The position numbers and the translations under genes were made by a program. Below the pieces are notes generated by a model. That model saw only the letters and a list, made by a program, of their open reading frames with translations. It searched no databases and was not told the DNA's origin. A stretch of 32,000 nt of DNA from Zygophlyctis sp. KS116 (lineage: Eukaryota; Fungi; Chytridiomycota). Below, piece after piece: positions 13,649 to 17,926 of the stretch (position 1 is the stretch's first letter; the number at the start of each line of letters is the position of its first letter). The stretch covers positions 6,302-38,301 of the forward strand of contig BAAFSQ010000083.1 in the NCBI GenBank assembly GCA_054661495.1. Direction: 5' to 3'.

Positions 13649-16600
13649 CTAAGGCTCTGAATCGTCCACACTGCTTCGATCCAGAAAATCAGGAACAGAT
13701 ACGCGCCGATTGGGATTTTTTCTGCTTGATAGAATAGGGGTTTTTACAGGAGATTTTAATACAGATGAGTTTGCCTCATCGCTAAGGCTTTGAAGAGAGT
13801 TTTCTTGATCATTTGAACTTTTCCCCATCTTCCTCTGGTTAGATATATTCAGTCCATTATCATCAAAAAACTTTTGAATCACTCGATTCATGGAATATTC
13901 TACACAATTTTTTGTAAGCAATTTATCTACTGATTTCTGATCCATGATAATTATTGGGGATTTTTGAATTTTTCCGTAATTCGCAATGTCCGGTAATATA
14001 TCTGGACCATTTCCTGTAGTGGCAGAGAAAGGCTTAAAAAAAGACATGATGTCTTTTTGCTGCTGGAGTATTTAATAAAAAATTATGCTTACCATCTTTC
14101 TGTCAGATTCGTTAAAAGCATATTTACATGGCTTCATTGTAGATTTTTTCTTTGCATCAGACATAATGTCTACCTAAATTTTACTCAATCCAGTCATTCT
14201 TACTGCTTTGGATTCTGAGTCGTTACATGGTTTAGAAAGTGATTCTAGCTCATTATTCTATCAGATTAGTAAATTATCTGAAGCATACTGTGCATATATC
14301 CATTTTGTCTACTGTTTGAACTTGATCCACCAGTGCGGTTTCTGATAATGTAATTTCGGACATTTGTGGCCTAGAGGTCACAACTGACGATGAATCTTGT
14401 TCAATTGAATTATTTACAGAATCTTTTTCTTGAGATTCGTGGTCAATATTATGTTCTAAATTCGGAAGCGACCTTCTTTTATGCATTCGACTTGATGCTG
14501 CTAGTTCAAGATCGAGGTCCAGAGCTGCAGTACAGTCCTCCCCCTGTAACCAATTCGGCTTAGATCTTCTTCTACCGGATCTTCTCGTTTGATCTTCTAG
14601 ATAAAAGGCTTTATCCAATTGATAGTAATAATCATCCACGGCACTAGTCGATGTGCGCTTTTTTACTTTAGGCAACTTCTTTCTTTTCACCAAAGGATTT
14701 TTAAAGTCAGAATCAGATTGTTCAGCTGCTAAATTTTTATCATCGTCAATGGTGGCTGTCTCATGCATATCCTCCGTTTCGGGCTTTCTCTTGCGAGTGT
14801 TTTTAGCCGATCTCGATTTAGCCTTATCATCAACTTGGACTTCCTCCTTAGAAGCCGAAATTTCATTAGAATTCAACATATACTCTTCTACATTGGTGTT
14901 TGATTTTCGTTTTTTTCGAGATGATTTTGATTTGATATCGGCTTCTAACTTTTCTGTAGAAACCTCATTATATAAATCTATTGCTTTTTCATCATTAACT
15001 TGATTGTTCATTGTTTTAATTTCATTTGAGCACGATATATACTCTTTATCCAAAATCTAATGGTTCAAAACTGTAAAAAATTACTATGAGAGCTGCTGAT
15101 AAACTATTTTGGGACTTCCTTGAATTTGGAGAAGTTAAAATAGGATTCAGCTATATTGGTAAAAAATATTTTAAGTACCAAAGGGTCTGAAATCTCCATT
15201 TTATCATCATCTGATTCTTTGGCAATACGAGAGAAAAATGACAAGATGTTTCCATTTTTAGATTTGTTTCGAATATTTGATCCTAAATTCGACAACTTTA
15301 AACTAGCGAATTTCTTGAATGATGATTCAGGATCCGATTGTTTGAATTTTCGAGAATCAGAAAAATCGTTTCCAGGCCGGAATCGTATTGAAGACTTTGC
15401 AGAGCTCGGAGGAGCAAAGCTTTGATCAGCAACATCTGTTTCAGCAGTTTGTTTCTTCTGTTGTTAAATATATTTAAAAATCACACCCTGTATATTCTTG
15501 GAGGCTTTCTTTTATCCAAATTTTCTTTTCTAGCAGACTTTTTTGCTTTCTTCATATACCGGTTGTTCATTTCAAGCAACCTTTCTCTTTCCAATTCTTT
15601 GATTCGATTTTGCCGTGCAAGGTCTCTTTCTCTCCACGCCTTCCATCTCATCTTACCAGAAACAACCCCTGTAACTAGAAACTCTTTAGCAAGTCTCATT
15701 GGCTTATCATCTTGTTCCAGAAACCTAGGGTCTTCGGCTTGTATATTACGGAAAATAGTATCTTCCTTTTGAACCTTTAAACTTGAATATAAGCTTTAAA
15801 TGAGAATTACAATGAGTGGTCCTCAAAATATCTGATCACTTCTTCGTCCTCGTCAACATTTTTGAAAATAGAGACATCAACCTCATCTTTTGGTATGCTA
15901 ATTGCCGGCCAAAAAGCACCACCATCTCCAAGGTGAATCACCACAAGCTTCTTGGCAAATTCAACTAACAATAAATGAACATAAACATACTAGAATCTGG
16001 GAAATCGGGGCCCGGATCAATCGGCACTATTTCCTCAATATCTTCGTCGGAATCTTCGTCCGATTCAAAAGTACTATATCTATCCTCGAACTTGAAAAGT
16101 TTTGTAATATCAAATCGTTTTACACCATTGGAGAGCTTAAGCAACTTGAGTTGCTTACGAATTGCTAGCATTGAAGTCTATCATCATTTGCAAAATTAAA
16201 TTACATAAATTTCAAAGCAAATTTCTCCATTGTGACGCATCTTTGTAATTGGTTTTCTCGAGGGGAATGGCATATTAAAGATGAGTAAATGACGTACACA
16301 GCGAACACAAGGATCAAGAGACGTATCACTGCCAGCTGAAGATCCCATTTCAGAATGTGGAGTATGGCAACAAATGCATCTAGTCATTCTCCTAAGATCC
16401 TCCAATTCCTTTTTCCTAATCTTTAAATGTTCGCCGAAATTAGGTATGTCATAGTAGTTAAAATTAGCCGCTCTGGCAGTAGCTGCTCGAGCTTTTACAG
16501 AGCCTAGTAAAGCCCCTTCACCAAAATTTTCTATTTCTGAATCTGCTATCAAGTCTTTTCCAGCAAAACCATTTCTTTGAAATCTAAAAGATTAAAAGAG

Positions 16601-17926
16601 AAAATAAAACTACTTTTCACAAGTCACGCATAAACATTCTTGATTGTTAACCCCAAAATAATTGGCTGAATAAAAAGTCGTGATTTCTTCTCCCACTTTA
16701 ATCGGTTTGACCACTTTAAAAGACACAATATTTGTATTCATATTGATAAACTAATATTATAATTCAGCATATACCTTTGTATTTGCTTGACAATCATGAT
16801 TGACAAATCGTGCAGGACCAAGAAATAAACACATGCACTTTTTCTTTGTAGAGTACATTACACTAAAATCTCTATTCTTGAGTGCCAGCTCATCTTCTCT
16901 AGATAATTCTGCAATTACTCCTGTACAAGCTTTAATTTGATCACCAGGATTCCAATCTTGCGTTGCAACCAGTTTTGCTTCTGCCTTTTCAGAACTACTA
17001 TACCTAAAAGTCCTGTTAATCTCAAACCCAGCATTTGGAAGATAAACCATTAAATATCTACATAAATGCCTATCATTAAATAATTCTAATATACTCTTTT
17101 AGCAACATTTCCTCCCTTTCCGTTAAACCATTCTTAAGAGTCTGTGAATATTTACTCTGCAGTCGCGATAAAGCAATTTCAAACAAGTAATTTTCTTCTG
17201 GGGAAGAATCTCTAGTTTTAAGTCTAATTTTTAGTATAATTTCGCACATACTCATTCAAAACCAGAGGATCTTTTAAAATTTGAATCAATTGATTAGCCG
17301 AATCTTCCACCTCCTTTTTTGTAAGAATATTATTCCTAATAAAAAAAGTTAAAATGACTGCCAAAGCCTCACTTGAAGTCAGCGACTCATAGATACTATC
17401 ATCTGGAATCAATGCCAACTCCTCTCTTTGAACTTTTTTCTCTAATTCTTCTGCCTGATCTGCATCCCTTGACTCTTTTAGACCATTTTCCTCTAAATCA
17501 TTTCCATTTAGAGTCTCGAAAGCCTGCATAGTCTGATTTTCAATTACATTTTCGTGTCTAGTCTCTTGCTCCAACTCGTGATTTTCTTGTAAAAATTGTA
17601 TACTTGAATCCGTTTCCTGTGCTATTACTTTTTCCTTTAAAGAATTATCAATTTCTAAAGAATCTAAAGACTCTTGCACTATATTTTCTATATTCTGAGA
17701 ATTTTCTAGAATTCCATCAGTCTCTTGTAGAGCTATATTTAGAATGAATAATATTACCGCTATGCATGAATTTATGAGTTTCAAATCCCAAAAACATTGT
17801 ATCCAACAAGAGCGAAGAACATAAATCATCAAAAACCGATAATTCAGCATATGGATATCCAGCATCAGCCTTTCTCCTTCCTTCTCGAACAATCTTTTCT
17901 TGAATTACTTGGTCTGCAGTTTCCAT
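13649..17926 (-). CDS. SET9: Histone H4K20 methyltransferase Set9/SUV4-20 (KMT5) with Zn motif, PWWP-like domain and long tail, about 1295 aa, 15 exons
   Basis: Introns at 17733-17757, 17224-17251, 17070-17094, 16751-16774, 16584-16613, 16178-16204, 15965-15990, 15782-15810, 15458-15486, 15151-15178, 15057-15084, 14258-14288, 14174-14203 and 14063-14092 give one open frame of 3888 nt. Motifs: [46 protein letters not shown], post-[11 protein letters not shown] and fungal-Set9-type CVRCVRH..FNMPFP. Confidence 0.92.

What the first reader, a model, noticed from the sequence alone, without database searches (positions are those of the whole stretch)
15640..15964. Set9/SUV4-20 fused to a PWWP-like reader domain hidden in small exons
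Seen: exons largely missing from the ORF track splice to [25 protein letters not shown]...[20 protein letters not shown]...[11 protein letters not shown]. This has PWWP architecture: an xFWPA strand, a YF-D-S-F loop and a C-terminal helix. Known: in S. pombe, Set9 is recruited by a separate PWWP protein, Pdp1, and the SUV420H/Set9 enzymes I know carry no PWWP. Inference: this is a writer-reader fusion that could let H4K20 methylation self-propagate or couple it to another methyl mark such as H3K36me.
Basis: partly seen in the sequence, partly recalled or inferred. Interest (0 to 1): 0.8.

Follow-up and report, generated by a model that had tools for sequence, protein, structure and literature searches.

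The report
Set9 methyltransferase with built-in PWWP reader
This chytrid fungus's H4K20 histone-methylating enzyme (Set9/KMT5) does carry its own PWWP chromatin-reading domain, but dozens of early-branching fungi and two protist relatives share the fusion, so it looks like an old, overlooked design and not a one-off.

Summary
On the minus strand, a Set9/KMT5B-type gene starts at ATG 17926 and has at least 9 exons, with introns of only 24-30 nt. Exon 8 (15964-15811) and exon 9 (15781-15481) follow its SET domain.

No Pfam or PDB search recognises exon 8 or 9 alone. The support is indirect:
- The two exons match, in order, a roughly 125-residue domain present in 53 of 255 Set9 relatives.
- Pfam calls that domain PWWP in several of those relatives.
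- AlphaFold folds it confidently (pLDDT 89.7), and every top structural match is a PWWP domain (Z up to 9.4).
- A metagenome contig from a related chytrid has the same SET-to-PWWP exon order and the same intron positions.

The fusion is not unique to this genome. It occurs across Chytridiomycota and in Blastocladiomycota, Kickxellomycotina, Basidiobolus, Mortierellaceae, Fonticula and the holozoan Pigoraptor. It was not detected in the Dikarya, Mucorales or animals sampled. It therefore looks ancestral to opisthokonts. I found no paper describing it.

Not supported or untested: the 15-exon transcript (the 3' exons are probably a separate gene), and what the domain binds. I did not search or fold the joined spliced protein.

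The parts
17758..17926 (-). Exon 1: ATG start and the N-terminal helical segment of the SUV4-20 family (..[20 protein letters not shown])
   Evidence: The ORF piece matches the N-terminal region of 60 of 150 Set9/KMT5 relatives. Gene model.
17252..17732 (-). Exon 2: acidic low-complexity insert, then the conserved pre-SET helices. The acceptor could also be at 17723, in frame.
   Evidence: Frame analysis. No homologue match for the insert.
17095..17223 (-). Exon 3: pre-SET helical region
   Evidence: Gene model. Flanked by 28-nt and 25-nt GTA..TAG introns.
16775..17069 (-). Exon 4: SET domain core, including ..[10 protein letters not shown]..
   Evidence: PDB KMT5B/SUV420H1 at 8e-25. Pfam SET partial hit. 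1335 library hits. Conserved in L006 at 81% DNA identity, with differences 13/7/32 by codon position.
16614..16750 (-). Exon 5: end of SET and the post-SET motif CxCxxC
   Evidence: Matches 122 of 150 relatives. The 24-nt intron before it must be removed for the sequence to align with KMT5B.
16205..16583 (-). Exon 6: linker plus the fungal Set9 zinc-type motif C.CC...C.RC.RH..IF..PFP.R
   Evidence: Matches 21 relatives. The same motif appears in the consensus of chytrid, basidiomycete and mucoralean Set9 alignments. The 30-nt intron choice (16613-16584) is supported by L006.
15991..16177 (-). Exon 7: acidic linker (..[21 protein letters not shown])
   Evidence: Conserved in L006. Gene model.
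15811..15964 (-). Exon 8: first half of the PWWP domain (strands 1-3), with motif A-F-W-P-A and RYFED
   Evidence: Profile of other Set9 proteins: E=2e-12, positions 25-58. phmmer hits to 5 relatives at the places where Pfam calls PWWP. 66% identity in L006, third-codon-position bias 10/7/24.
15782..15810 (-). Intron 8: 29 nt, GTAATT..CAAG, splits a Phe codon inside the PWWP domain
   Evidence: Removing it restores the frame and the alignment with homologues. L006 has an intron of the same length, position and phase.
15481..15781 (-). Exon 9: second half of the PWWP domain (strands 4-5 and helices, ..[11 protein letters not shown]....RWKAW), then a basic coiled tail. TGA stop at 15483-15481 unless spliced at 15487.
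   Evidence: Profile E=1e-6, positions 71-118. Alignment A1. Own-genome profile search also hits C83:21899-22066, which is window 15598-15765.
15104..15457 (-). Possible exon 10: a 117-codon open frame with no ATG near its start, reachable through a 29-nt GTGTGA..ACAG intron (15486-15458). It would extend the protein to 859 aa. Uncertain.
   Evidence: Open frame of 119 codons in 35% GC DNA; weakly positive codon score only in this frame. No homologue and no RNA junction.
13649..15011 (-). Probable separate downstream gene, with ATG at 15011.
   Evidence: The ORF has its own ATG near its 5' end. The only joining intron available is atypical (74 nt, GTCCC donor). No Set9 relative matches it. One metatranscriptome contig lies at 14754-14904.

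Best explanation
The locus is the chytrid's orthologue of Set9/KMT5B-C, the SET-domain enzyme that methylates histone H4 lysine 20. It has at least 9 exons on the minus strand, and its polypeptide carries a divergent PWWP domain about 170 residues after the SET/zinc region. Shown: gene structure, orthology, homology of the domain to PWWP, and a wide phyletic spread of the fusion. Inferred: the PWWP acts in cis as a chromatin anchor. It would bind a methylated histone lysine together with nucleosomal DNA and hold the enzyme on its substrate. S. pombe achieves this in trans, with the separate PWWP protein Pdp1 that binds H4K20me and is needed for Set9 action. The most likely ligand is the enzyme's own lower-methyl product (H4K20me1/2), which would favour conversion to higher states and local spreading. 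H3K36me2/3 is the main alternative. The architecture is most simply read as ancestral to opisthokont KMT5B/C, lost later in animals, Dikarya and Mucorales.
For: Orthology: SET exon against PDB KMT5B/SUV420H1-2, E=8e-25. 1335 library hits, the closest named ones being Chytridiales Set9 proteins. The N-terminal helix and the Set9 zinc motif are conserved.

One gene: open 743-codon frame after removing eight 24-30 nt GTA..AG introns. Contig L006 from a relative has the same exon order from SET to PWWP and the same intron positions and phases. More than 50 species have SET and this domain in one annotated protein.

PWWP identity: Pfam PF00855 is at or above its cut-off in P0014, P0015 and P0120, and below it in P0053 and P0008, at the positions exon 8 matches. 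Profile A1 hits only PWWP chains in PDB down to E=0.06: DNMT3B 5.6e-4, Pdp1 2l89 3e-3, ARID4A. The AF2 model of the Phlyctochytrium domain has pLDDT 89.7, with five strands followed by helices. All 50 top Foldseek matches are PWWP. VIA-align gives Z 9.4-7.5 at 2.5-3.3 A over 80-100 residues, all PWWP. Paralogues of the same subtype in the same genome give weak direct Pfam PWWP hits.

Cage: the second Trp of the motif and the strand-3 aromatic (Y of RYFED, aligned to DNMT3B W263) are kept, as is the Asp aligned to D266. The DNMT3B residue numbers are from memory.

Ancestry: in the SET tree, the Pigoraptor protein with PWWP is sister to animals (100/100), and Fonticula branches next.
Against: No tool recognises the window's own exons as PWWP directly: Pfam on single exons, PDB phmmer, PF00855 scan of the genome and ESM Atlas all gave nothing. 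I did not search or fold the joined domain. There is no RNA read across any junction. In this lineage the motif is one residue shorter (A-F-W-P-A; L-W-P-G in L006), and the first cage aromatic cannot be placed, so methyl-lysine binding may be weakened. The ligand is unknown: the profile scores DNMT3B (an H3K36me reader) slightly above Pdp1. The ancestral reading needs three to five independent losses. The Pigoraptor sequence comes from a transcriptome.
Confidence: 0.75

Rival explanations
1. The fused PWWP reads H3K36me2/3, as most characterised PWWP domains do. It would target H4K20 methylation to transcribed or H3K36-marked chromatin instead of reading the enzyme's own product.
For: The best sequence and structure matches include H3K36me readers: DNMT3B, BRPF1, HDGF/HRP-2, NSD, Ioc4. 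In Zymoseptoria, H4K20me3 and Ash1-dependent H3K36me3 are functionally linked (PMC10553808).
Against: Pdp1, the only PWWP known to work with Set9, is reported to bind H4K20me, and it aligns over the strand 2-3 loop without a gap while DNMT3B needs one. Fold similarity does not reveal ligand.
Confidence: 0.3
2. In this lineage the domain keeps the PWWP fold but has lost methyl-lysine reading. It would serve only as a DNA- or nucleosome-binding or protein-docking module.
For: The motif is shortened to A-F-W-P-A (L-W-P-G in the relative L006), and the residue aligned two before the first Trp is Gly. The Asp aligned to DNMT3B D266 varies in the family: N in P0014 and P0015, V in P0008 and P0012. 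A strongly basic tail follows the domain.
Against: The cage Trp and the strand-3 Tyr are kept in the window and in 19 of 20 family members. The Phe before the Trp could supply the third aromatic. The third-position bias shows purifying selection on exon 8.
Confidence: 0.2
3. The SET exons and the PWWP exons belong to two adjacent genes, and the fusion is an artefact of joining open frames.
For: No RNA read spans a junction. The genome is very compact, with near-zero spacers noted elsewhere in the window.
Against: Exons 7 and 8 have no usable start codon context. Every junction from exon 4 to exon 9 has a 24-30 nt GTA..AG intron that restores the frame. Positions and phases are conserved in L006, where one intron is 25 nt and therefore cannot be read through. 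Independently annotated proteins of more than 50 species have both domains.
Confidence: 0.03

Closest known systems
S. pombe Set9 (Kmt5) with its partner Pdp1 (PWWP protein; PDB 2l89)
   Same: Same enzyme family and same kind of reader domain. Profile A1 hits the Pdp1 PWWP at E=3e-3, with an ungapped strand 2-3 loop. Pdp1 is reported to be in a complex with Kmt5 and required for H4K20 methylation (PMC10553808, citing Wang et al. 2009).
   Different: Here reader and writer are one polypeptide. The sampled ascomycete Set9 proteins show no trace of the domain by profile-profile comparison. Whether Pdp1 descends from this PWWP subtype is untested.
Animal KMT5B/KMT5C (SUV420H1/H2)
   Same: Orthologous N-terminal helices, SET and post-SET regions (E=8e-25). 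The SET tree recovers a Holozoa clade.
   Different: No PWWP domain detected in the Xenopus, Myxine, Pelobates, Callorhinchus, Mytilus or Eurosta representatives.
NSD1/2/3 (and other SET enzymes with PWWP domains)
   Same: A reader-writer fusion of PWWP with a SET methyltransferase. NSD3 PWWP2 and NSD2 PWWP1 are among the structural matches.
   Different: A different SET subfamily (H3K36 rather than H4K20), a different domain order, and PWWP sequences that are not closely related.
DNMT3A/B PWWP domain
   Same: The best sequence-profile match in PDB. It shares WWPA and the strand-3 aromatic and acidic pair.
   Different: It is attached to a DNA methyltransferase and reads H3K36me2/3. The Set9-type domain has a longer strand 2-3 loop with a conserved E.D.SMP signature and a trailing W..W helix.
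Annotated Set9 proteins of early-diverging fungi (e.g. Phlyctochytrium arcticum KAI9095837.1, Synchytrium microbalum, Basidiobolus ranarum Set9)
   Same: Same architecture and same domain subtype. The window gene is one more member.
   Different: Most are annotated with SET only. Precomputed Pfam lists PF00855 for three of them. The window copy has the shortened A-F-W-P-A motif and tiny introns.

Membership tests
KMT5B/C - Set9 (SUV4-20) histone H4K20 methyltransferases | SET domain of the SUV4-20 subtype, closest to KMT5B/C and not to other SET families | tested here: met
   Exon 4 against PDB: all 10 hits are KMT5B/SUV420H1/H2, E=8e-25 to 2e-22. The library search returns Set9/KMT5 proteins.
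KMT5B/C - Set9 (SUV4-20) histone H4K20 methyltransferases | N-terminal helical segment preceding SET, and the post-SET CxCxxC motif | tested here: met
   Exon 1 matches 60 of 150 relatives and exon 5 matches 122 of 150.
KMT5B/C - Set9 (SUV4-20) histone H4K20 methyltransferases | Fungal Set9 C-terminal zinc-type motif C..C ... C.RC.RH ... WP.R | tested here: met
   Present in exon 6 (CICC...[16 protein letters not shown]). The same motif is invariant or nearly so in alignments A2, A3 and A4.
KMT5B/C - Set9 (SUV4-20) histone H4K20 methyltransferases | Methylates H4K20 | not testable with these tools
   Needs an enzyme assay or a mutant.
PWWP domain (Pfam PF00855, Royal family) | Scores above the Pfam gathering threshold (25.6 bits) | tested here: inconclusive
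   The window's exons scanned singly gave no hit. I did not scan the joined domain. Homologous domains score 28.9 (P0014), 26.1 (P0015) and 25.6 (P0120), with others below. Same-genome paralogues score 16-18 bits.
PWWP domain (Pfam PF00855, Royal family) | Five-stranded barrel followed by a helical bundle, superposable on solved PWWP domains | tested here: met
   Met for the homologue P0014:520-660: pLDDT 89.7, all top-50 Foldseek matches are PWWP, Z up to 9.4. It carries over to the window only by alignment.
PWWP domain (Pfam PF00855, Royal family) | P-W-W-P motif at the start of strand 2 | tested here: inconclusive
   The family has [FY]-W-W-P-A. The window has A-F-W-P-A and the relative L006 has A-L-W-P-G, one residue shorter. 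Variants such as S-W-W-P and P-H-W-P are accepted in known members (from memory).
PWWP domain (Pfam PF00855, Royal family) | Aromatic cage of three residues for methyl-lysine | tested here: inconclusive
   Two positions are kept: W of FWPA aligned to DNMT3B W239, and Y of RYFED aligned to W263. The Asp is also kept. The third aromatic cannot be assigned without coordinates.
PWWP domain (Pfam PF00855, Royal family) | Binds methylated histone lysine and/or DNA | not testable with these tools
   Needs binding assays.

The most novel reading that the evidence does not exclude
KMT5B/C arose in the opisthokont ancestor already fused to a PWWP reader, so reader-assisted H4K20 methylation is the original design. 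Animals, Dikarya and Mucorales later lost the cis reader. The fission-yeast partner Pdp1, and the free-standing 183-residue PWWP protein of the same subtype in this chytrid, would then be detached descendants of that same PWWP lineage.
Probability: 0.2. Interest if true: 0.65.

Novelty: new variant of a known kind. Interest (0 to 1): 0.5.

Why it matters
How Set9/KMT5 enzymes find chromatin and move from mono- to trimethylation is poorly understood outside fission yeast. One recent fungal study states that Pdp1 is the only known Kmt5 partner and that it has no orthologue in filamentous ascomycetes (PMC10553808). A conserved, built-in PWWP in the Set9 of most early-branching fungal lineages, Fonticula and a close relative of animals gives a concrete hypothesis: the Set9-Pdp1 partnership is the trans form of an ancient cis arrangement. 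The hypothesis is testable in tractable chytrids such as Spizellomyces. It also shows that standard domain annotation misses this PWWP in most of the proteins that carry it. For this genome alone the finding is ordinary, since the gene is a normal member of its clade.

Tried and rejected
**Searches that gave nothing**
- Pfam on each exon alone: only weak SET hits, no PWWP.
- phmmer of exon 8 against PDB: nothing.
- ESM Atlas feature search with exon 8: only low-scoring bacterial clusters.
- PF00855 scan of the whole genome: it found a different, canonical PWWP gene but not this locus.

**RNA evidence**
- The only holders were two freshwater metatranscriptomes. Each gave one 151-nt contig inside an exon and no junction.

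**Wider homologue searches**
- Word-index search with the Phlyctochytrium PWWP region returned only itself.
- Contig look-ups for the two closest SET fragments gave contigs of about 1 kb, or no DNA.
- A local hhalign script misbehaved. I replaced it with the profile-profile tool, which found no PWWP in basidiomycete, ascomycete, mucoralean or glomeromycete Set9.
- phmmer of the free-standing PWWP paralogue against PDB was uninformative.

**Ideas rejected**
- A ciliate-type genetic code, prompted by the tiny introns. Gln is encoded by CAA/CAG, and the introns shift the frame.
- The single 13-15-exon gene. It needs an atypical 74-nt GTCCC intron, and the next ORF has its own ATG.

The exons were joined only inside scripts, to check frame and length.
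Full report
**Gene structure**

The finding lies in a minus-strand eukaryotic gene in AT-rich DNA (35% GC). Earlier notes of this scan attribute the genome to a freshwater chytrid. Three-frame translation and a shortest-path search over GT..AG introns give an open frame from ATG 17926 through nine exons to a TGA at 15483-15481. That is 743 codons, after removing eight introns of 24-30 nt that all start GTA and end AG.

Several of these introns are not multiples of three, or they carry in-frame stops. Removing them restores residue-for-residue alignment with KMT5B, for example across NHDCQANTK|FINMNTN. So they are real introns, not read-through coding sequence.

**Identity of the enzyme**

- The largest SET exon (16775-17069) hits only KMT5B/SUV420H1/H2 chains in PDB, at E=8e-25 to 2e-22.
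- It has 1335 relatives in the representative library. The closest named ones are Set9-type proteins of Chytridiales (Dinochytrium, Podochytrium, Physocladia, Siphonaria) and Spizellomycetales.
- Exon 1 carries the family's N-terminal helix and exon 5 the post-SET cysteines.
- Exon 6 carries the zinc-type motif C..C...C.RC.RH...P.P.R. This motif is invariant or nearly so in chytrid, basidiomycete, ascomycete and mucoralean Set9 alignments.

This is the genome's orthologue of Set9/KMT5. A second, more distant Set9-like SET region sits on another contig (C341, 40% identity).

**The PWWP-like segment**

Direct recognition failed for the window's own sequence: Pfam on single exons, phmmer against PDB, the ESM Atlas and a PF00855 scan of the genome all found nothing.

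Homologues gave the answer:

- Exon 8 alone finds five of the 150 Set9 relatives, downstream of their SET domains. At those positions Pfam reports PWWP at 28.9 bits in P0014, 26.1 in P0015 and 25.6 in P0120, against a cut-off of 25.6. P0053 and P0008 score lower.
- A profile built from six such regions, without the window, hits exon 8 at E=2e-12 (positions 25-58) and exon 9 at E=1e-6 (positions 71-118), in order.
- Alignment A1 shows a shared signature: VFV.P.D...WWPA..VP..E.D.SMP...VV.YFED.SYS...EP...AV.RA..FL..G....W..W. The window's two exons fit either side of intron 8.
- The A1 profile hits only PWWP chains in PDB down to E=0.06: DNMT3B 5.6e-4, S. pombe Pdp1 (2l89) 3e-3, and ARID4A.
- AlphaFold2 on the Phlyctochytrium domain, with A1 as its alignment, gives pLDDT 89.7 and five strands followed by helices.
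- All 50 best Foldseek matches are PWWP domains. The second-look aligner gives Z 9.4-7.5 at 2.5-3.3 A over 80-100 residues, again all PWWP.

For the window, the fold assignment therefore rests on homology.

**Are SET and PWWP in one gene?**

There is no RNA junction evidence. The only public RNA holders were two metatranscriptomes, each with one 151-nt contig inside an exon (16333-16483 and 14754-14904). Comparative evidence fills the gap.

- A 1321-nt freshwater metagenome contig (L006) from a related organism covers the SET exon through the first 17 codons of exon 9.
- It has the same exons in the same order. Introns 4 to 8 sit at the same positions and phases (24-29 nt), and one is 25 nt and so shifts the frame.
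- Exon 8 is 66% identical in protein. Its DNA differences fall 10/7/24 by codon position, like the SET exon's 13/7/32.
- SET and this domain sit in single, independently annotated proteins in more than 50 species.

**Distribution**

A profile of the domain finds it in 53 of the 255 Set9/KMT5 proteins collected.

Present in:
- many Chytridiomycota
- Hyaloraphidium
- Sorochytrium (Blastocladiomycota)
- Coemansia and Dipsacomyces (Kickxellomycotina)
- Basidiobolus
- Mortierellaceae
- Fonticula alba
- the holozoan Pigoraptor chileana

Not detected in:
- basidiomycete, ascomycete, mucoralean or glomeromycete Set9, even by profile-profile comparison
- the animal KMT5B/C representatives

In a maximum-likelihood tree of the N-terminal and SET region, Pigoraptor (with PWWP) is sister to animals at 100/100, and Fonticula branches next. 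The holozoan case is therefore not a fungal contaminant. Presence or absence needs five changes on the tree, at least three of them forced by well-supported branches. The simplest reading is one old fusion and several losses. This fits the published inference that KMT5B/C arose in Opisthokonta (bioRxiv 10.1101/2021.11.30.470311).

**Is it already known?**

Precomputed Pfam lists SET+PWWP for only three of the proteins (P0014, P0179, P0184). The others show SET alone. Six full-text searches found no paper describing a Set9/KMT5-PWWP fusion. PMC10553808 states that little is known of Kmt5 partners in fungi apart from S. pombe Pdp1, and that Zymoseptoria has no true Pdp1 orthologue. The architecture is present in databases but, within my limited search, undescribed.

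**Mechanism (inferred)**

PWWP domains bind methylated histone lysines through an aromatic cage and bind DNA through a basic surface. In the window, the cage Trp (FWPA) and the strand-3 Tyr and Asp (RYFED) align with DNMT3B W239, W263 and D266 (residue numbers from memory). The motif is one residue shorter than in most relatives, so the third aromatic cannot be assigned.

By analogy with Pdp1, I favour a cis-acting anchor that reads H4K20me1/2 and promotes higher methylation and local spread. Two rivals remain open: reading of H3K36me, and a cage-less DNA or nucleosome anchor. The Pdp1 alignment spans the long strand 2-3 loop without a gap, whereas DNMT3B needs a four-residue gap. That is only a weak hint of closer kinship.

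**The 3' end**

After exon 9 the frame ends at a TGA. However, a 29-nt GTGTGA..ACAG intron (15486-15458) would join it to a 117-codon open frame that has no ATG near its start, giving an 859-residue protein. I consider this plausible but unproven.

The next ORF, open from 15056 with an ATG at 15011, can be joined only through an atypical 74-nt GTCCC intron. It matches no Set9 relative.

**Other copies in the same genome**

The Set9-type PWWP profile also finds three other loci:
- a free-standing 183-residue protein on contig C6 (weak Pfam PWWP hit)
- a protein on C115 where the domain is followed by an extended PHD finger (zf-HC5HC2H_2, 7e-17)
- a copy on C34

A canonical PWWP with a TFIIS-type helical bundle, LEDGF-like, lies on C18. 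The free-standing copy is a candidate functional analogue of Pdp1.

**Verdict**

The window gene is an ordinary member of a widespread, apparently undescribed Set9+PWWP architecture.

Noticed in passing
window 15458-17757 (introns of the Set9 gene); L006: All eight supported introns are only 24-30 nt long (GTA..AG), and the related metagenome contig has equally small introns at the same sites. As far as I recall, that is unusually short for a fungus.
   Followed up: partly
window 14277-15056, minus strand: The downstream 260-codon ORF (ATG at 15011) contains [16 protein letters not shown], which resembles the CENP-C motif as I remember it. Pfam gave no hit. It may be a divergent centromere protein gene and not Set9 exons.
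   Followed up: no
window 13652-14071, minus strand (about 14035-14058); also about 15210-15235: A canonical PIP-box-like motif QKDIMSFF sits at the start of the last exon. A weaker one, NGNILSFF, lies in the possible exon 10. These are candidate PCNA-binding motifs and are untested.
   Followed up: no
L009:1378-1929 (+) = G000:C6: A free-standing 183-residue protein consists almost only of a Set9-type PWWP domain (V-F-W-P-A motif, trailing KWKIW). It lies between unrelated housekeeping genes and is a candidate Pdp1-like partner in the same genome.
   Followed up: partly
L010:1054-1905 (-) = G000:C115: Another gene joins the same PWWP subtype, across a small intron, to an extended PHD finger (Pfam zf-HC5HC2H_2, 7e-17). 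Its tail KYKWKAWLEMDQQRKSRIKKE closely parallels the tail after the Set9 PWWP.
   Followed up: partly
L012:1333-2106 (-) = G000:C34: A fourth copy of the Set9-type PWWP (..VFVDPQDPKSLFWWPAIVI..), split by introns. The gene context was not worked out.
   Followed up: no
P0057 (Clydaea vesicula), P0158 (Lobulomyces angularis): Set9 proteins of Lobulomycetales carry four tandem copies of the PWWP-type domain.
   Followed up: no
P0065 (Fonticula), P0089 (Dipsacomyces), P0164 (Coemansia): These Set9 proteins carry a C-terminal Tudor-knot/MSL3 chromo-like domain in addition to the PWWP-type domain, so they have two reader modules on one writer.
   Followed up: no
L008 = G000:C341:3371-3568: A second Set9-like SET region in the same genome, 40% identical over 65 residues.
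   Followed up: partly
L001:634-1725 (-) = G000:C18: A canonical PWWP (33 bits) with a TFIIS/Med26 helical bundle, which is a LEDGF/HDGF-like H3K36me-reader architecture in this chytrid.
   Followed up: partly
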